Shown: positions 2,271 through 52,545 of the stretch, piece by piece
Numbering within the stretch: the first letter of the stretch is position 1
Layout: each line of letters opens with the position of its first letter
Assembly (NCBI GenBank): GCA_002811645.1
Contig: PDIP01000010.1
Location: 186,001 to 250,000 of the forward strand
Source: Corallochytrium limacisporum Hawaii
Lineage: Eukaryota; Protista; Pluriformea
Direction: 5' to 3'
Length of the DNA: 64,000 bases
Notes under the pieces: generated by a model
The model's database searches: none
Seen by the model: the letters and a program-made list of their open reading frames with translations, nothing else
Told to the model about the DNA's origin: nothing
Translations under genes and position numbers: made by a program

Positions 2271-2486
2271 NNNNNNNNNNNNNNNNNNNNNNNNNNNNNN
2301 NNNNNNNNNNNNNNNNNNNNNNNNNNNNNNNNNNNNNNNNNNNNNNNNNNNNNNNNNNNNNNNNNNNNNNNNNNNNNNNNNNNNNNNNNNNNNNNNNNNN
2401 NNNNNNNNNNNNNNNNNNNNNNNNNNNNNNNNNNNNNNNNNNNNNNNNNNNNNNNNNNNNNNNNNNNNNNNNNNNNNNNNNNNNNN
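2271..2486. other. Assembly gap (216 N) inside a GC-rich low-complexity spacer
   Basis: Run of N flanked by G/C runs. Confidence 0.99.
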
Positions 2487-11582: not shown

Positions 11583-14500
11583 CTACCAACTCAGTTTCTG
11601 CCCATCGTCACCACAGCCGTTGGAGGCAGCAGTGATGGGAGAGTTTGTGATGCGCCGAAGCATGGTCTTCTCGTATTTCGAGTACAGATTGATCATACCG
11701 CCACCCTGGAGCATTTTGAGCTCCACGTCGGTCATCTCGAAAGGGAACTTCTGGTTATCAATTGTCACAGTGCGGTCATGCAGGGAGATGGAAATATTAT
11801 GGCCCTCCTCGGCGAGCCAGTAGAATGTGTCATCTTTGATGACAATGCCAAGCAGGCCCATATTCGGCTGATTGCGATGGTAGATGAAAGCAAAACCGCG
11901 AGCAATGACAGCCTTGACCCCGACGCCCATCAATGCGCGGACGGCCTCCTCCCGGGAACTGCCGGAGCCGAAACCGTGACCGGCGACGATAATGCTGTGC
12001 CCTTCCTTTACGAGGTTGCGGAAGTCGGGCTTGAAGAACTGGAAGCAGTGTGTGCCCAGGTCCTCGTCGCTCTCACCAGGCATGAATTGCGCGGGGATGA
12101 TGGCGTCTGTGTCAATGTTGTCACCAAGGATCTGTGGCTTACCCACAATGGTGCTTTCAGTCGCGCCGCTTCCATCGACGGCCATGTTCTCCTTGTTCTC
12201 ATCCGTTCCGTTCGCAGCGCCATTGGCAGCAGTATCTTTGATCAGCTCGGGCTCCGGCTCAGTATACTCTATAGGACTCTTTACCGGGTTCTCGAAGATG
12301 AAGTACTTCTCAAACTTCTCCTTGTCAATTTTGTCGAGATATTTACGCGGATTCTCGATCTGCATATCGAAGGAGGAGGCACACACTGTTGCTGCACTTG
12401 CCAGGTTGCCAATCGATCCCTTACCCATGCGGTTCCGGAAGTTACGGTTCTGACTGCTCAGCCAGACCTCACCTTCACCAGCCTTATCATAGCTCACACC
12501 AACGCAGTAGCTGCAGCCAGGCGCACCTACCTCGAAGCCGGCCTTCTGGTAAATTTCCAGCAGGCCCCACTTTCGCATCTTGGCGACAATGTTCACACTG
12601 CCCGGTGTGACCCGACGCTTGCCTTCGCCTGTCGGTACGCGACCTTCCTTCATGGCAGCTTCGAGGACCAGAGCGCCGAGCACAAGGTCTTCTTCAGCGG
12701 TGGTACAGGCACCGACAAAAACACCGTCGAGTTTCTTTCCCGCCACCTTGTCCACGTGAACGACATCATCCGGGCTCGGGTACAGAGCCACGAGCGAGTC
12801 CACGTCACCGAGATCGATTGTGTACCGTTCTGCGTACTTGGCATCGTCATCGGCCTTCATATACTTGCCACCACCACGGTATTTGCCGGTCTGGCGGTTT
12901 ACAATATACTCGTGCACGACCTCGTCAGCCGGGAACACTCCGACAATGCCACCGAATTCGGTGGTCATATTGGCAATCGCAAAACGGGCATCACAAGAGA
13001 GGACATTCAAGTTACCGCCCCACTCCACTGCACGCTCAAAGGCGACAGTGTTGCGCTTAAGGTAGCCCATGACGTGGAGAATGATGTCCTTGCCGCCGAT
13101 ACCGAATGGCGGATTACCGACCAGGTCGATACGGATGGTTTCTGGCACCCGCATCCATGTCTCACCAGTGACCATTGGCATCACCACATCGGCAGCCCCA
13201 AGACCGGCGGCCCAGGCCCCCATGCTGCCCGCACTGCACGTATGGCTGTCCGCACCAATGACGATCTGACCCGGGAGCACGCGCTCACGGCAGAACTCGG
13301 TGTGCAGGATAGTCTGATTCGGGGGCTGGTATTCGGACAGGCCGGCTTCCTTGGCAAAGTTTTCGGCTTGGGTGATAAGCTTCTTCTGCTTAGGTTCGTG
13401 GTAGTTGCGTGGGTCCACAGTATGGTCGACAGCGAGCCAGAACCGGTCATTACGGAAAATCTTTGGCCTTCCCAAGGCTTCGTAGGTCTTCTCCATGCCA
13501 GGCCAAGTCAGTTCAGAGGCGAGCGTCCACTGCACCTTGAGGCAGATGACGTCACCGGGTTTGACCCAAGGGTCCTTTAAACCCACCGCATTGTGGCACA
13601 GCAGTTTTTCATTCAAATTCATAGGGATCTTTCCCGCATGTGCCATAGCAGCGGGGAGGTGTTCGATGATACGATCGGTCATCTCCGTAGTGGAAAGATG
13701 AGCCTTCGGGTCAAGGTCAGCCGTGCGATATCCTTTGGCGAGGGCCTCAAACACAGCGTTCTCGACGGCCTTGGCTTCTTCCTGCAAGCCCAGACTCAGT
13801 CGTAGTAGCATGGCGGCGCTGAGGATCGTTCCAACAGGGTTGGCAATGCCCTTGCCCGCAATGTCGGGCGCACTGCCGTGAATGGGCTCGTACAGGCCGT
13901 TCGTGCCCTGCGCAGACAGGCTCGCGCTGGGCAGCAAACCAAGAGAACCCGACAACACGGACGCTTCATCAGTGATAATGTCACCAAACAAATTCGACGT
14001 CACAATCACATCAAAGTCCTTCGGCCGCTTGATAATGTGCATGGTCGCAGCATCAATGAGCATATGCTCCAGCTCAACTTCAGGGAACTCATCCCGGATC
14101 ACACGTGTGGCAACCTGACGGAAAAGACGACTGCACGCCAGCACGTTGGCCTTGTCAATCTGCACAACCTTCTTACGGCGCTGCATAGCCAATTCACCCG
14201 CCTTGCGAACAATCCGTTCAATCTCCGGCACCGTGTACTCCATCATGTCGTACGCGTAGCCGTTCTCATCCACCTCCTGCCGCTTTCCAAAGTAGATGCC
14301 ACCGGTCAGCTCTCGCACACACACAAAGTCAACACCCGCAATGTTCTCCTCCTTCAGAGGCGACGCAGTCTCAGAGATTCCGGGGAACGCGAATGTTGGA
14401 CGAATGTTCGCAAACAGCTCCAGCTCCTTGCGCAACTTCAGCAAACCTTGCTCCGGGCGGACCTCAGACTTGGCCCACTTGGGTCCGCCAACCGCACCCA

Positions 14501-14717
14501 TGAGGATGGCATCAGCATTGCGGCAGTTGTTTAGAGTATCGTCAGACAGTGGAGAACCATGGGCATCAATTGCGCACCCACCTAGCAAATCTTTCTTGAA
14601 AGTGAATTCGTGCCCCTTCAGAACAGCAACCTCCTTCAAGACTCGAACTGCCTCTTCGGCAACTTCAGGACCGATACCGTCGCCCCCGAGGACGACGATG
14701 TTGGCTGTTGTAGGCAT
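11583..14717 (-). CDS. Fusion of 3-isopropylmalate dehydrogenase (LeuB) with aconitase-family dehydratase large (LeuC-like) and small (LeuD-like) domains
   Basis: 1044-aa uninterrupted ORF. aa 1-362: GDGIGPEV, RPEQGLLKLRK, NLFGDI, EPIHGSAPDIAGKGIANP. From aa 366: GADSHT, Fe-S cysteines GACTT and PGCSYC, NRNF. C-terminus: DNIDTDAIIPA, FGSGSSREEA. Confidence 0.93.
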   Translation of the reverse strand: MPTTANIVVLGGDGIGPEVAEEAVRVLKEVAVLKGHEFTFKKDLLGGCAIDAHGSPLSDDTLNNCRNADAILMGAVGGPKWAKSEVRPEQGLLKLRKELELFANIRPTFAFPGISETASPLKEENIAGVDFVCVRELTGGIYFGKRQEVDENGYAYDMMEYTVPEIERIVRKAGELAMQRRKKVVQIDKANVLACSRLFRQVATRVIRDEFPEVELEHMLIDAATMHIIKRPKDFDVIVTSNLFGDIITDEASVLSGSLGLLPSASLSAQGTNGLYEPIHGSAPDIAGKGIANPVGTILSAAMLLRLSLGLQEEAKAVENAVFEALAKGYRTADLDPKAHLSTTEMTDRIIEHLPAAMAHAGKIPMNLNEKLLCHNAVGLKDPWVKPGDVICLKVQWTLASELTWPGMEKTYEALGRPKIFRNDRFWLAVDHTVDPRNYHEPKQKKLITQAENFAKEAGLSEYQPPNQTILHTEFCRERVLPGQIVIGADSHTCSAGSMGAWAAGLGAADVVMPMVTGETWMRVPETIRIDLVGNPPFGIGGKDIILHVMGYLKRNTVAFERAVEWGGNLNVLSCDARFAIANMTTEFGGIVGVFPADEVVHEYIVNRQTGKYRGGGKYMKADDDAKYAERYTIDLGDVDSLVALYPSPDDVVHVDKVAGKKLDGVFVGACTTAEEDLVLGALVLEAAMKEGRVPTGEGKRRVTPGSVNIVAKMRKWGLLEIYQKAGFEVGAPGCSYCVGVSYDKAGEGEVWLSSQNRNFRNRMGKGSIGNLASAATVCASSFDMQIENPRKYLDKIDKEKFEKYFIFENPVKSPIEYTEPEPELIKDTAANGAANGTDENKENMAVDGSGATESTIVGKPQILGDNIDTDAIIPAQFMPGESDEDLGTHCFQFFKPDFRNLVKEGHSIIVAGHGFGSGSSREEAVRALMGVGVKAVIARGFAFIYHRNQPNMGLLGIVIKDDTFYWLAEEGHNISISLHDRTVTIDNQKFPFEMTDVELKMLQGGGMINLYSKYEKTMLRRITNSPITAASNGCGDDGQKLSW

Positions 14718-15940
14718 AATTCTATCCTGAGCCGAGCCAACGGATTACTTCACTTATGTGAGAGTTTGATCAAGAGACTTAGTATGTTTATGGTCGGGTT
14801 TGGTGGTGGTGTTAAATAACCTCTTGAGGCATTCGGACGTGGAAGGGTTTTTCTCCGGCTCTCATACGCCACTGCCACCGTCACTGCCCATGCAGTTGCG
14901 CCTGCCACAACGAATTTCACCCCAGATAAGCCGGTCAGCAATACATAGTGAGGGTTTAACTGTGCTTTGTAAGCTAGCGCTACCAGCAAAAAGGAAAGCG
15001 GGATTGGATTTTCCACCACCACAAAGGCTTTACAAGCCACGGATGGAGTAATCCGGATGCCATGGCCCAACGGCCGCTCAGGGAATCTTACACTTGTGAT
15101 CAGGACAATCGCAATTTCCCTCCTCTTCACCTCCTCCACCCCCACCTGCGTGCCGCTCTCCGCGCTGGCACTATCGCTTCAACCCTTCCCTCTGCTTCGC
15201 CTTTCCTCCGGTCTCCCCTCCCTCCCTCTTTCTTCCCTCTGATCGCGGAGATCAGACTTTTCCACTGCCTGCGGCTCCTGCTCTTAGGAAGTTCCGAGGT
15301 TTGGTGGTTGGTGGTTGGGTTCGAAAATGCTGACCCTCCTGCAACCCCCCTCCCCCATCGCTGGGTCTACATACCTTCCAAAAAATGGTAAGTATGCGGC
15401 GCCAACGTGTCTCCCTTGTGCGGAGACCCGGCCGGCCGGGACGGGGAAGGGTGTGTGTTTTAGTTTTCTTGTTTGGAATTATTCACTCCCCTCCCCCCCA
15501 CCAACCAACCAACACCCCTGCCTATGGGTTCCTGTCCTGTAGTTTTCGCAGCTAGTCCGCGGTGCAGCAGCAGAGCACACCAAACCCATCCGGGCTGCCA
15601 ATTACGTGTAGGGGCCTAATTATAGGATTGCTTCTCCGTCAGACCTGCCCACAGGTGGGCATCGGAGGGTTGGCACGTATGCGCAGATTGGACTGTTTTT
15701 CATATTGAGAGTTTCTATTCGATTTCGTTGTTCCTATTTCTTAACAAAGGATAAGACATGTTGAAGAGGTGTCCAGACACAGACATAGGTAGTCACAGAG
15801 TTAGAAGGAGCGATCCATTATTATACAACTCTACACCGCGGTCCATGCTCTAGCTCAAGACTCACAGTGGAGACGACTGAGACCGATGAACGCACGCCAA
15901 CATTTTCGGGTCGTATTCTCATTCAAACTGATCGACAGCC

Positions 15941-17168
15941 TCATCCACCACGGGCCATAGTGGCTTGAAGTTGTTCAATGATGCGGTCGGTCATTTCCGT
16001 AGTGGAGATGTGGGCCTTCGGGTCAAGGTCAGCCGTGCGACATCCCTTGGATAGGGTCTCAAACACAGCGTTCTCGACGGCCTTGGCTTCTTCCTGCAAG
16101 CCCAGACTCAGTCGTAGTAGCATGGCGGCGCNNNNNNNNNNNNNNNNNNNNNNNNNNNNNNNNNNNNNNNNNNNNNNNNNNNNNNNNNNNNNNNNNNNNN
16201 NNNNNNNNNNNNNNNNNNNNNNNNNNNNNNNNNNNNNNNNNNNNNNNNNNNNNNNNNNNNNNNNNNNNNNNNNNNNNNNNNNNNNNNNNNNNNNNNNNNN
16301 NNNNNNNNNNNNNNNNNNNNNNNNNNNNNNNNNNNNNNNNNNNNNNNNNNNNNNNNNNNNNNNNNNNNNNNNNNNNNNNNNNNNNNNNNNNNNNNNNNNN
16401 NNNNNNNNNNNNNNNNNNNNNNNNNNNNNNNNNNNNNNNNNNNNNNNNNNNNNNNNNNNNNNNNNNNNNNNNNNNNNNNNNNNNNNNNNNNNNNNNNNNN
16501 NNNNNNNNNNNNNNNNNNNNNNNNNNNNNNNNNNNNNNNNNNNNNNNNNNNNNNNNNNNNNNNNNNNNNNNNNNNNNNNNNNNNNNNNNNNNNNNNNNNN
16601 NNNNNNNNNNNNNNNNNNNNNNNNNNNNNNNNNNNNNNNNNNNNNNNNNNNNNNNNNNNNNNNNNNNNNNNNNNNNNNNNNNNNNNNNNNNNNNNNNNNN
16701 NNNNNNNNNNNNNNNNNNNNNNNNNNNNNNNNNNNNNNNNNNNNNNNNNNNNNNNNNNNNNNNNNNNNNNNNNNNNNNNNNNNNNNNNNNNNNNNNNNNN
16801 NNNNNNNNNNNNNNNNNNNNNNNNNNNNNNNNNNNNNNNNNNNNNNNNNNNNNNNNNNNNNNNNNNNNNNNNNNNNNNNNNNNNNNNNNNNNNNNNNNNN
16901 NNNNNNNNNNNNNNNNNNNNNNNNNNNNNNNNNNNNNNNNNNNNNNNNNNNTGAGGATGGCATCAGCATTGCGGCAGTTGTTTAGAGTATCGTCAGACAG
17001 TGGAGAACCATGGGCATCAATTGCGCACCCACCTAGCAAATCGCTCTGGAAGGTGAAAGTGTGTCCCTTGAGAGCAGCAACCTCCTTCAAGACGCGGACT
17101 CCCTGTTCGGCGACTTCGGGGCCGATGCCGTCACCGGCGAGGACAACGATATTTGCATTTGTGGACAT
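15941..17168 (-). CDS. Stand-alone 3-isopropylmalate dehydrogenase paralog (middle hidden by gap; predicted ~362 aa)
   Basis: Starts MSTNANIVVLAGDGIGPEV (ATG 17168) and ends EQLQATMARGG-stop (15941). Gap flanks are identical to the fused copy; filling with the 681-nt equivalent segment restores the frame. Confidence 0.8.
16132..16951. other. Assembly gap (820 N), probably a collapsed repeat shared with 13820-14500
   Basis: 74-nt and 91-nt flanks are identical to 13746-13819 and 14501-14591. Confidence 0.9.
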
Positions 17169-52457: not shown

Positions 52458-52545
52458 NNNNNNNNNNNNNNNNNNNNNNNNNNNNNNNNNNNNNNNNNNN
52501 NNNNNNNNNNNNNNNNNNNNNNNNNNNNNNNNNNNNNNNNNNNNN

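What the first reader, a model, noticed from the sequence alone, without database searches (positions are those of the whole stretch)
11583..14717. Single-chain LeuB-LeuC-LeuD fusion: two consecutive leucine-pathway steps in one protein
Seen: one intronless 1044-aa ORF joins an intact dehydrogenase directly to an aconitase-family large domain (three Fe-S cysteines) and, via a low-complexity linker, to a swivel domain. The RPEQGLL motif points to isopropylmalate dehydrogenase rather than isocitrate or homoisocitrate dehydrogenase. Known: bacteria use three genes, and fungi fuse only LeuC and LeuD (Leu1) while keeping Leu2 separate. Inference: the dehydratase half (WTLASELTW, IFRNDRFWLAVDH, GACTTAEEDL) looks more like the poorly characterised fungal AcoC-like clade than Leu1. 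If so, the fusion is Rosetta-stone evidence for that clade's function and could channel 3-isopropylmalate. I do not recall this triple fusion being described.
Basis: partly seen in the sequence, partly recalled or inferred. Interest (0 to 1): 0.8.

Follow-up and report, generated by a model that had tools for sequence, protein, structure and literature searches.

The report
Fused leucine-pathway dehydrogenase–isomerase gene
A real, intact gene in the protist Corallochytrium joins two consecutive leucine-synthesis enzymes in one protein, but the same fusion is widespread in early-diverging fungi and other protists and already sits, unstudied, in public protein databases.

Summary
Window 11583-14717 (-) is one uninterrupted 1044-aa ORF with three parts: a full LeuB (above NCBI's LeuB equivalog cut-off), a 13-residue junction, and a single-chain archaeal/bacterial-type aconitase-family dehydratase (large domain, disordered linker, swivel domain).

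The rarity claim fails. At least 113 of the 120 best database clusters carry Iso_dh+Aconitase, from chytrids to Glomeromycotina, Neolecta, some Fusarium, an ichthyosporean and Physarum. Seven add a LeuA-type synthase. The exact 1044-aa model is already in EukProt. I found no paper describing the fusion.

Function is inferred, at about 0.7. The genome has LeuA, IlvC, IlvD, a separate homoaconitase and homocitrate synthase, but no Leu1/LeuCD-type isomerase. So the fused module or a paralog must isomerise isopropylmalate. Bacterial relatives often sit beside LeuA-like and LeuB-like genes.

New here: the genome also holds split copies, both derived from fused genes. A tandem LeuB-only copy keeps a relic of the dehydratase start. 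A dehydratase-only copy on another contig keeps the fusion's upstream region. All are under purifying selection.

AcoC membership could not be tested. The finding is moderately interesting and not unique. The scan's index held no other note on this architecture.

The parts
11583..14717 (-). Whole CDS of the fusion (1044 aa plus stop)
   Evidence: the exact protein is present in EukProt as P0121
13668..14702 (-). LeuB (3-isopropylmalate dehydrogenase) module, Pfam Iso_dh aa 6-350
   Evidence: TIGR00169 leuB equivalog 478.8 bits against cut-off 353.2
14439..14459 (-). RPEQGLL substrate loop of LeuB (aa 87-93)
   Evidence: nearly invariant in non-Dikarya fusions and invariant in four-domain relatives, degenerate in the Dikarya fused clade
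13623..13661 (-). Junction HLPAAMAHAGKIP (aa 353-365) between the LeuB C-terminal helix and the first helix of the dehydratase module
   Evidence: same junction position in holozoan, Physarum and Allomyces fusions; pLDDT 84-85, not predicted disordered
12318..13622 (-). Aconitase-family large (catalytic) module, aa 366-800 (Pfam Aconitase aa 428-783)
   Evidence: best PDB matches are the M. jannaschii isopropylmalate/citramalate isomerase and homoaconitase large subunits, E about 1e-60
13239..13256 (-). GADSHT catalytic motif (aa 488-493)
   Evidence: aligned to 4nqy; coordinates
12699..12713 (-). GACTT with Fe-S ligand Cys671
12504..12518 (-). GCSYC with Fe-S ligands Cys735 and Cys738
12429..12458 (-). 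SSQNRNFRNR substrate-binding motif (aa 754-763)
12150..12281 (-). Low-complexity linker between the large and swivel domains (aa 813-856)
   Evidence: pLDDT below 50 for aa 829-850
11676..12143 (-). Swivel (LeuD-like small-subunit) domain, aa 859-1014
   Evidence: TIGR02087 LEUD_arch 119.3 bits against cut-off 108.95; PDB 2pkp and 3vba
12075..12086 (-). FMPG specificity loop (aa 878-881), at the position of YLRT (homoaconitase) and YLVY (isopropylmalate/citramalate isomerase) in M. jannaschii
   Evidence: FMPG marks the LeuB-fused clade; bacterial relatives and the C275 clade have GEF(C/L)H
15017..15301 (-). Upstream region of the fusion that is also conserved upstream of the dehydratase-only paralog on contig C82
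   Evidence: BLAST 74% over 301 nt; alignment
15941..17168 (-). Tandem LeuB-only paralog (CDS interrupted by scaffold gap 16132-16951)
   Evidence: flanks 87-89% nt identical to the fusion; dN/dS 0.19 over 130 codons
15913..15940 (-). 3' UTR of the LeuB-only paralog holding a roughly 20-nt relic of fusion codons 366-371 (MNLNEK)
   Evidence: the BLAST match runs past the stop codon; alignment

Best explanation
The gene encodes a cytosolic bifunctional enzyme of leucine biosynthesis. The C-terminal single-chain [4Fe-4S] dehydratase, of bacterial/archaeal LeuCD type and not Leu1 type, isomerises 2-isopropylmalate to 3-isopropylmalate. The N-terminal LeuB module then oxidatively decarboxylates it to 4-methyl-2-oxopentanoate. 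Because LeuB enzymes are homodimers (established knowledge), the likely assembly is a LeuB dimer core carrying two isomerase modules on short, ordered connectors, which places consecutive active sites in one particle. Shown here: the architecture, intact catalytic motifs, LeuB family membership, the pathway context and the evolutionary conservation of the fusion. Inferred: the substrate of the dehydratase half, the quaternary structure and any channelling. The fusion is old (fungi, holozoans, Amoebozoa). In this genome it has recently been duplicated twice, and each extra copy lost one module, giving a parallel split enzyme pair.
For: (1) The LeuB half passes the TIGR00169 equivalog cut-off (478.8 against 353.2) and keeps RPEQGLL. 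(2) The dehydratase half keeps the three cluster cysteines, GADSHT and the SxNRNFRxR motif. Its swivel loop FMPG has no Arg, unlike the YLRT loop of homoaconitase. (3) Pathway hole: the genome has LeuA (TIGR00973 663.6 against 598.7), IlvC and IlvD over their cut-offs, but no LeuC or LeuD of Leu1 type (best 111.9 against 560 and 59.7 against 116). The lysine branch has its own homocitrate synthase, homoaconitase (764 against 530) and HICDH-like gene. The only LeuB genes are this fusion and its truncated copy. (4) Seven relatives add an IPMS-type catalytic domain in front of LeuB and the dehydratase. (5) 30 of 80 bacterial single-chain relatives have LeuA-family and/or Iso_dh-family genes within 6 kb, some abutting on the same strand. 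(6) The two module trees share the same clades, and the junction position is conserved, including in transcriptome-derived proteins. (7) Lysine-branch and TCA enzymes carry basic, acid-free N-terminal extensions; the fusion, its paralogs and LeuA do not. (8) Purifying selection: dN/dS 0.12 and 0.19 against the paralogs. (9) AlphaFold2 gives mean pLDDT 86 and pTM 0.73, with junction pLDDT 84-85.
Against: No experiment exists on any family member. No RNA evidence was obtainable. The large-domain scores lie below every NCBIfam cut-off (306.7 against 385 at best). The FMPG loop matches no characterised isomerase, so specificity cannot be read from it. Two paralogs (C82 at 93% identity, C275 at 55%) could fill the pathway hole instead. 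The bacterial neighbours are divergent synthases and borderline LeuB-type dehydrogenases, so their substrate is open. The Dikarya fused clade has a degenerate LeuB loop and a transporter/methyltransferase neighbourhood in Fusarium, which suggests the family is not always used for primary leucine synthesis. pTM alone does not prove a fixed inter-module geometry.
Confidence: 0.7

Rival explanations
1. The fused dehydratase serves a different 2-alkylmalate (for example citramalate for isoleucine, or another 2-oxoacid chain-elongation cycle), and the C275 paralog is the main isopropylmalate isomerase. The LeuB half would then be promiscuous or dual-purpose.
For: Two ancient eukaryotic paralog clades coexist in this genome, and C275 keeps the bacterial-like loop GEFLH. 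The closest solved enzyme is itself dual isopropylmalate/citramalate. The bacterial triads have non-canonical synthases. The four-domain proteins lack the leucine-regulatory domain.
Against: The fused partner is an equivalog-level LeuB, and it is the only LeuB lineage in the genome. No citramalate-synthase-type gene was seen among the four HMGL-family loci. The IPMS-type domain in the four-domain relatives scores best against IPMS models.
Confidence: 0.15
2. The fusion works in the lysine alpha-aminoadipate pathway as homoaconitase plus homoisocitrate dehydrogenase.
For: The dehydratase half scores almost as well on homoaconitase-family models as on isomerase models (TIGR01343 283.8). The best small-subunit PDB hit is the homoaconitase subunit 2pkp.
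Against: The genome has a bona fide Lys4 (764 bits), a homocitrate synthase and an HICDH-like gene, all with presequence-like N-termini that the fusion lacks. The loop has no Arg. The dehydrogenase passes the LeuB model and fails the homoisocitrate dehydrogenase models.
Confidence: 0.03
3. The fused ORF is not expressed as one protein: either it is a misassembly between paralogs, or the dehydratase is made separately from an internal start at Met366.
For: Near-identical paralogs and a scaffold gap lie next door. Met366 is conserved and the C82 copy starts just upstream of it. No RNA data could be obtained.
Against: There is no stop, no N and no repeat at the junction. The identical junction occurs in more than 100 other proteins, including transcriptome assemblies. 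The paralogs differ from the fusion by 8-13% at the DNA level, so assembly collapse is unlikely. The EukProt gene model is fused. The two standalone genes carry relics of a fused ancestor.
Confidence: 0.05
4. Only one module is catalytically relevant, and the other is a scaffold or pseudo-enzyme.
For: Low-confidence loops around the cluster-binding region in the model (aa 741-767). Standalone copies of each module exist.
Against: All catalytic and ligand residues are conserved in both modules across 74 fused homologs. dN/dS is 0.12-0.19.
Confidence: 0.05

Closest known systems
Unnamed database family with Iso_dh + Aconitase + Aconitase_C architecture (for example Nk52_evm35s222, or Allomyces, Rhizophagus, Piromyces and Neolecta proteins auto-named '3-isopropylmalate dehydrogenase' or 'putative aconitate hydratase')
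   Same: Same three-module order and the same junction. 52-62% identity outside Dikarya. RPEQGLL and FMPG are conserved. The window's protein falls in the clade holding all three-domain fusions, beside the ichthyosporean on the LeuB tree.
   Different: Nothing essential. The linker is shorter than in most fungi. This genome additionally holds split derivatives.
Fungal Leu1 (LeuC-LeuD fusion) plus separate Leu2, as in S. cerevisiae
   Same: Same two reactions are proposed. The large and small dehydratase subunits are likewise on one chain. The LeuB loop is Leu2-like.
   Different: The dehydratase belongs to a different subfamily (TIGR00170 148 bits against cut-off 560). The dehydrogenase is covalently attached. 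No Leu1-type gene exists in this genome.
Methanocaldococcus jannaschii isopropylmalate/citramalate isomerase (PDB 4nqy, 4kp1, 3vba) and homoaconitase (4kp2, 2pkp)
   Same: These are the closest solved structures. The Fe-S ligands and catalytic motifs align.
   Different: The archaeal enzymes are two-subunit and unfused to LeuB. Their specificity loop is YLVY or YLRT, against FMPG here.
Bacterial single-chain relatives (Myxococcota, Planctomycetota, Ktedonobacterales, KSB1, Zixibacteria and others)
   Same: 44-52% identity over about 660 aa, with large and small domains on one chain. Frequently next to LeuA-family and Iso_dh-family genes.
   Different: Not fused to the dehydrogenase. The loop is GEFCH. 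The neighbouring synthases and dehydrogenases are non-canonical, so the substrate is unknown.
Four-domain LeuA-LeuB-dehydratase proteins (P0065, P0067, P0069, P0071, P0073, P0074, P0076; unidentified eukaryotes)
   Same: They contain the same LeuB-dehydratase pair and keep RPEQGLL.
   Different: They carry an extra N-terminal IPMS-type catalytic domain without the regulatory domain. They form a separate clade with an xML loop.
Aspergillus fumigatus AcoC (XP_747512), named in Fazius et al. 2012, PMC3556520
   Same: Also an uncharacterised third aconitase-family protein, only about 15% identical to mitochondrial aconitase. A close relative, A. thermomutatus, has a fused family member (P0102).
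   Different: Relationship untested, because the AcoC sequence was not retrievable with these tools.

Membership tests
3-isopropylmalate dehydrogenase (LeuB, TIGR00169) | Full-length match above the curated equivalog cut-off | tested here: met
   478.8 bits against 353.2, profile positions 1-348 of 349
3-isopropylmalate dehydrogenase (LeuB, TIGR00169) | Hydrophobic substrate loop E-x-G-L-L (Glu87/Leu90/Leu91 in Thermus numbering, recalled from memory) in place of the Arg/Ser-Asn of homoisocitrate and isocitrate enzymes | tested here: met
   RPEQGLL at aa 87-93; the genome's HICDH-like protein has GYSSPIV at that position
3-isopropylmalate dehydrogenase (LeuB, TIGR00169) | NAD-dependent oxidative decarboxylation of 3-isopropylmalate | not testable with these tools
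   needs an enzyme assay
Archaeal-type LeuC/HacA large subunit (PRK00402, TIGR02086, TIGR01343) | Score above the subfamily cut-off | tested here: not met
   306.7 against 385; 283.8 against 410.15; 283.8 against 385.7. Best family but sub-threshold, so a related and distinct clade.
Archaeal-type LeuC/HacA large subunit (PRK00402, TIGR02086, TIGR01343) | Three Cys ligands of the [4Fe-4S] cluster plus the Asp-Ser-His and Asn-Arg substrate motifs | tested here: met
   Cys671, Cys735, Cys738, GADSHT and SSQNRNFRNR align to 4nqy
LeuD/DmdB small-subunit family (TIGR02087) | Score above the subfamily cut-off | tested here: met
   119.3 against 108.95
Isopropylmalate isomerase (functional class) | Small-subunit specificity loop of a characterised isopropylmalate type (YLVM/YLVY) and not the homoaconitase type (YLRT) | tested here: inconclusive
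   The loop is FMPG: no Arg, hydrophobic, but unlike any characterised loop
Bacterial/fungal LeuC-Leu1 (TIGR00170) and LeuD (TIGR00171) | Score above the equivalog cut-off | tested here: not met
   148.1 against 560.25. Genome-wide best 111.9 (LeuC) and 59.7 against 116.25 (LeuD)
Fungal homoaconitase Lys4 (TIGR00139) | Score above the equivalog cut-off | tested here: not met
   219.5 against 529.9. A different gene on C271 scores 764.4
Iso_dh-Aconitase-Aconitase_C fusion family (database architecture) | Same domain order, collinear full-length homology and a shared junction | tested here: met
   98-100% query coverage at 52-61% identity with dozens of members; junction alignment; trees
Fungal AcoC-like clade (Fazius et al. 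2012) | Orthology to A. fumigatus XP_747512 | not testable with these tools
   Only the accession is given in PMC3556520; the sequence was not retrievable

The most novel reading that the evidence does not exclude
A bacterial-type single-chain isopropylmalate isomerase fused to LeuB is the ancestral leucine-pathway enzyme of opisthokonts and perhaps of Amorphea. It was later displaced by Leu1 plus Leu2 in Dikarya and Mucorales, and in some protists extended to a LeuA-LeuB-isomerase protein covering three consecutive steps. Corallochytrium shows gene fission in progress: fused and split versions, all derived from the fused gene, coexist under purifying selection. That gives a natural system for measuring what fusion (channelling of 3-isopropylmalate) is worth.
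Probability: 0.3. Interest if true: 0.6.

Novelty: new variant of a known kind. Interest (0 to 1): 0.45.

Why it matters
If the inferred function holds, a large part of the fungal tree (chytrids, Blastocladiomycota, Zoopagomycota, Mortierellomycota, Glomeromycotina) and several unicellular relatives of animals make leucine with a different isomerase from the textbook Leu1, and that isomerase is covalently tied to the next enzyme. This would correct automatic annotations: these proteins are variously named 'isopropylmalate dehydrogenase', 'aconitate hydratase' or 'homoaconitate hydratase LYS4'. It would assign a function to an uncharacterised aconitase-family clade in eukaryotes and bacteria. 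It would also bear on leucine biosynthesis as an antifungal or anti-oomycete target. The coexistence of fused and split derivatives in one genome is a clean natural control for testing whether fusing consecutive enzymes gives a kinetic benefit. The finding is not unique, so its value is comparative.

Tried and rejected
(2) Biosynthetic-cluster idea (homo-amino-acid pathways such as hty-type genes): rejected for this locus, because the neighbours are housekeeping genes (Dom34/eRF1-like, AMP deaminase, Rpb3-like, LCAT-like, RPL4, DHHC, Mon2). (3) RIP-mutated pseudogene idea for the 31% GC stretch: rejected, because the low GC is an artefact of an 820-nt N run. (4) 'Clim_evm5s82 is a truncated model of this gene': rejected, because it is the separate paralog on contig C82 (exact match). 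(5) Gene-conversion tract between the LeuB copies: the visible flanks are only 87-89% identical with dS 0.36 and the middle is a gap, so there is no support. (6) Single-break fission: rejected, because about 8 codons around Met366 are present in both partial copies. (7) Literature: eight full-text searches and five papers read found no description of the fusion. Leonard & Richards 2012 (PMC3535628), the most likely place, is not held. (8) A first rooted tree with the mixture model was killed by the sandbox and was rerun with LG+G4. (9) Rooting with Lys4 gave a very long outgroup branch and was replaced by bacterial relatives. (11) I could not test whether fusion-bearing fungi lack Leu1: no tool here searches eukaryotic genomes by taxon.
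Full report
OBSERVATION. Window 11583-14717 (minus strand) is a single ATG-initiated ORF of 1044 codons with no stop, gap or N. Pfam finds Iso_dh (aa 6-350, E 2.9e-135), Aconitase (aa 428-783, 8.5e-70) and Aconitase_C (aa 905-961, 1.6e-13).

ORGANISM AND CONTEXT. The assembly has 24.1 Mb in 286 contigs, and the window is C11:186001-250000. Proteins encoded elsewhere in it are identical to EukProt entries prefixed 'Clim_' (exact match). I read that prefix as Corallochytrium limacisporum, a free-living unicellular relative of animals; the meaning of the prefix is from memory. The neighbours are housekeeping genes, not a metabolic cluster.

WHAT EACH HALF IS. The N-terminal 357 aa pass NCBI's LeuB equivalog model (478.8 bits against a cut-off of 353.2). 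They fail all isocitrate, homoisocitrate and tartrate dehydrogenase models. The RPEQGLL loop is the LeuB type; the genome's HICDH-like protein differs at that position.

The C-terminal 687 aa are a single-chain large-plus-small dehydratase. It scores best on archaeal-type LeuC/HacA models but below their cut-offs (306.7 against 385). It scores far below the Leu1-type LeuC model (148 against 560) and the fungal homoaconitase model (219.5 against 530). The swivel part passes the LeuD/DmdB subfamily model (119.3 against 109).

The closest solved structures are the M. jannaschii isopropylmalate/citramalate isomerase and homoaconitase. Cys671, Cys735, Cys738, GADSHT and SSQNRNFRNR align with their catalytic apparatus. 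At the small-subunit specificity loop the homoaconitase has YLRT and the isomerase has YLVY. This protein has FMPG: no arginine, so a tricarboxylate substrate is unlikely, but the loop is not a characterised type. The role of that loop is recalled from the M. jannaschii literature.

HOW COMMON IT IS. A word-based search of 5.8 billion proteins returned 113 clusters with Iso_dh+Aconitase among the best 120. They cover:
- chytrids, Blastocladiomycota and Neocallimastigomycota;
- Kickxellomycotina, Entomophthoromycotina and Zoopagomycotina;
- Mortierellomycota, Glomeromycotina and Endogonales;
- Neolecta, and a divergent set in Fusarium, Clonostachys, Pestalotiopsis and Aspergillus thermomutatus;
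- the ichthyosporean isolate Nk52, Physarum, and several transcriptome-only protists.

Seven of these clusters carry an additional N-terminal HMGL-like domain. That domain scores best against 2-isopropylmalate synthase models over profile positions of about 4-380 and lacks the regulatory domain. The exact 1044-aa sequence is already in EukProt. Several homologs are derived from transcripts, so fused mRNAs exist in other species.

Eight literature searches found no description of the fusion. AcoC is merely named and set aside in PMC3556520. PMC2904702 notes that the Mucor leuA marker encodes the isomerase, but says nothing on fusions. The library is incomplete, and the most relevant paper is not held.

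FUNCTION FROM PATHWAY CONTEXT. The genome encodes seven aconitase-family genes:
- two mitochondrial-type aconitases;
- one true homoaconitase (764 bits against 530);
- one AcnA/IRP-like protein;
- three members of the present clade: the fusion, C82 (93% identity) and C275 (55%).

The genome has a bacterial-type LeuA (663.6 against 598.7), a homocitrate synthase, an HICDH-like gene, and IlvC and IlvD over their cut-offs. No locus approaches the Leu1-type LeuC or LeuD cut-offs. The only LeuB genes are the fusion and its neighbour. So if the organism makes leucine, the isomerase step must be carried out by this clade.

The lysine-branch and TCA enzymes all have basic, acid-free N-terminal extensions. 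The fusion, its paralogs and LeuA start at the catalytic core. This is a soft argument that the fusion belongs with the leucine branch.

FUNCTION FROM RELATIVES. A scan of 185,579 prokaryotic genomes found 215 single-chain relatives at 44-52% identity over about 660 aa. They are mostly Myxococcota, with Planctomycetota, Ktedonobacterales, KSB1, Zixibacteria and others. In 30 of the 80 loci kept, a LeuA-family (24 loci) and/or Iso_dh-family (14 loci) ORF lies within 6 kb. Several abut on the same strand.

Those synthases are divergent and lack a regulatory domain. The dehydrogenases sit at the edge of the PRK03437-type LeuB model (373-397 bits against 393). This independently couples the dehydratase clade to a synthase/dehydrogenase triad, but it leaves the bacterial substrate open.

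PHYLOGENY. With bacterial relatives as outgroup, the eukaryotic proteins are monophyletic (100). They fall into the four-domain clade, a standalone clade (C275, Colp12, oomycetes) that keeps the bacterial-like GEF(C/L)H loop, and a large clade (98). The large clade holds every three-domain fusion plus nested standalone lineages; FMPG is its near-universal loop. That tree used LG+G4 with a quick search.

The LeuB-module tree recovers the same groups: early-diverging fungi (96), Blastocladiomycota, Dikarya on a very long stem, the four-domain clade, and Corallochytrium with Nk52 (83). So the modules have been inherited together. The Dikarya clade has only 30-41% LeuB identity, a degenerate loop, and in Fusarium an MFS-transporter and O-methyltransferase neighbourhood. 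It probably has a different role.

A FISSION CAUGHT IN THE ACT. Immediately upstream lies a LeuB-only gene (15941-17168, minus strand), broken by an 820-nt scaffold gap that replaces about 682 nt of coding sequence. The window has two other N runs. Its visible parts are 87-89% identical to the fusion (dS 0.36, dN/dS 0.19). Homology continues past its stop codon into a roughly 20-nt relic of fusion codons 366-371 and then ends.

The dehydratase-only gene on C82 is 92% identical over 2090 nt. The match runs from about 40 nt past the stop codon to 11 nt before the Met366 codon (dS 0.27, dN/dS 0.12). About 155 nt further upstream, C82 resumes homology (74% over about 300 nt) with the region 300-580 nt upstream of the fusion's ATG.

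Both standalone genes are therefore copies of a fused gene that each lost one module. The shared stretch of about 8 codons shows these were two separate events and not one break. On the tree the fusion's terminal branch is much shorter than C82's (0.0085 against 0.097).

STRUCTURE. AlphaFold2 with 74 fused homologs gives mean pLDDT 86 and pTM 0.73. The LeuB C-terminal helix (aa 343-361) leads, through a junction with pLDDT 84-85, into the first helix of the dehydratase (aa 368-375). The large-to-swivel linker (aa 829-850) and the C-terminal tail are disordered. This is compatible with a fairly rigid tether. No PAE was available, so the inter-module geometry and channelling remain inference.

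LIMITS. There is no experimental function for any family member. AcoC membership is untested. I could not test whether fusion-bearing fungi lack Leu1. The support values come from quick searches.

VERDICT. This is a genuine, conserved, probably bifunctional isomerase-dehydrogenase of leucine biosynthesis (about 0.7). What remains interesting is comparative: a non-Leu1 isomerase clade tied to LeuB across much of the eukaryotic tree, with three-step super-fusions, bacterial triads, and a natural fused-versus-split pair in this genome.

Noticed in passing
window 15941-17168 (-), gap 16132-16951: Tandem LeuB-only paralog of the fusion, interrupted by a scaffold gap. It keeps a roughly 20-nt relic of the dehydratase module's first codons after its stop codon.
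   Followed up: yes
G000 contig C82:13052-15118 (L005:349-2415, minus strand): 689-aa dehydratase-only paralog (identical to EukProt Clim_evm5s82), 93% identical to the fusion's C-half. Its upstream region is homologous to the fusion's upstream region. The contig ends 438 bp upstream of the gene.
   Followed up: yes
G000 contig C275 (L003:712-2805, minus strand): Third family member, 698 aa and 55% identical. It belongs to a standalone clade shared with oomycetes and Colp12 that keeps the bacterial-like GEFLH loop. Its role relative to the fusion is unknown.
   Followed up: partly
P0065, P0067, P0069, P0071, P0073, P0074, P0076; L022:585-5261: Four-domain proteins (IPMS-type catalytic domain without the regulatory domain, then LeuB, then the dehydratase) of 1340-1819 aa from unidentified eukaryotes. 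That is three consecutive leucine-pathway steps on one chain.
   Followed up: partly
L023-L102 (bacterial loci): Bacterial single-chain relatives, mostly Myxococcota. They are often flanked by a divergent LeuA/HCS-family synthase and a borderline LeuB-type dehydrogenase, forming an uncharacterised 2-oxoacid elongation triad.
   Followed up: partly
L021:10001-13444 (Fusarium keratoplasticum): The Dikarya fused clade has a degenerate LeuB loop and long stems in both module trees. In Fusarium it sits between a TRI12/MFS transporter and an O-methyltransferase, so it may serve specialised metabolism and not primary leucine synthesis.
   Followed up: partly
G000 contig C173 (L011:1504-5298, minus strand): 1265-aa AcnA/IRP-like protein. 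The aconitase match starts near residue 300 and is split by insertions, and it scores just below the AcnA cut-off.
   Followed up: no
window 2271-2486 and 52458-52545: Two further N runs (216 and 88 nt). The first lies inside the 259-aa ORF 1725-2504, which has no Pfam match.
   Followed up: no
L018, L004, L013 (contigs C256, C271, C176): Homocitrate synthase, homoaconitase and the HICDH-like protein all carry presequence-like N-termini. This suggests a mitochondrial alpha-aminoadipate lysine branch in this holozoan.
   Followed up: partly
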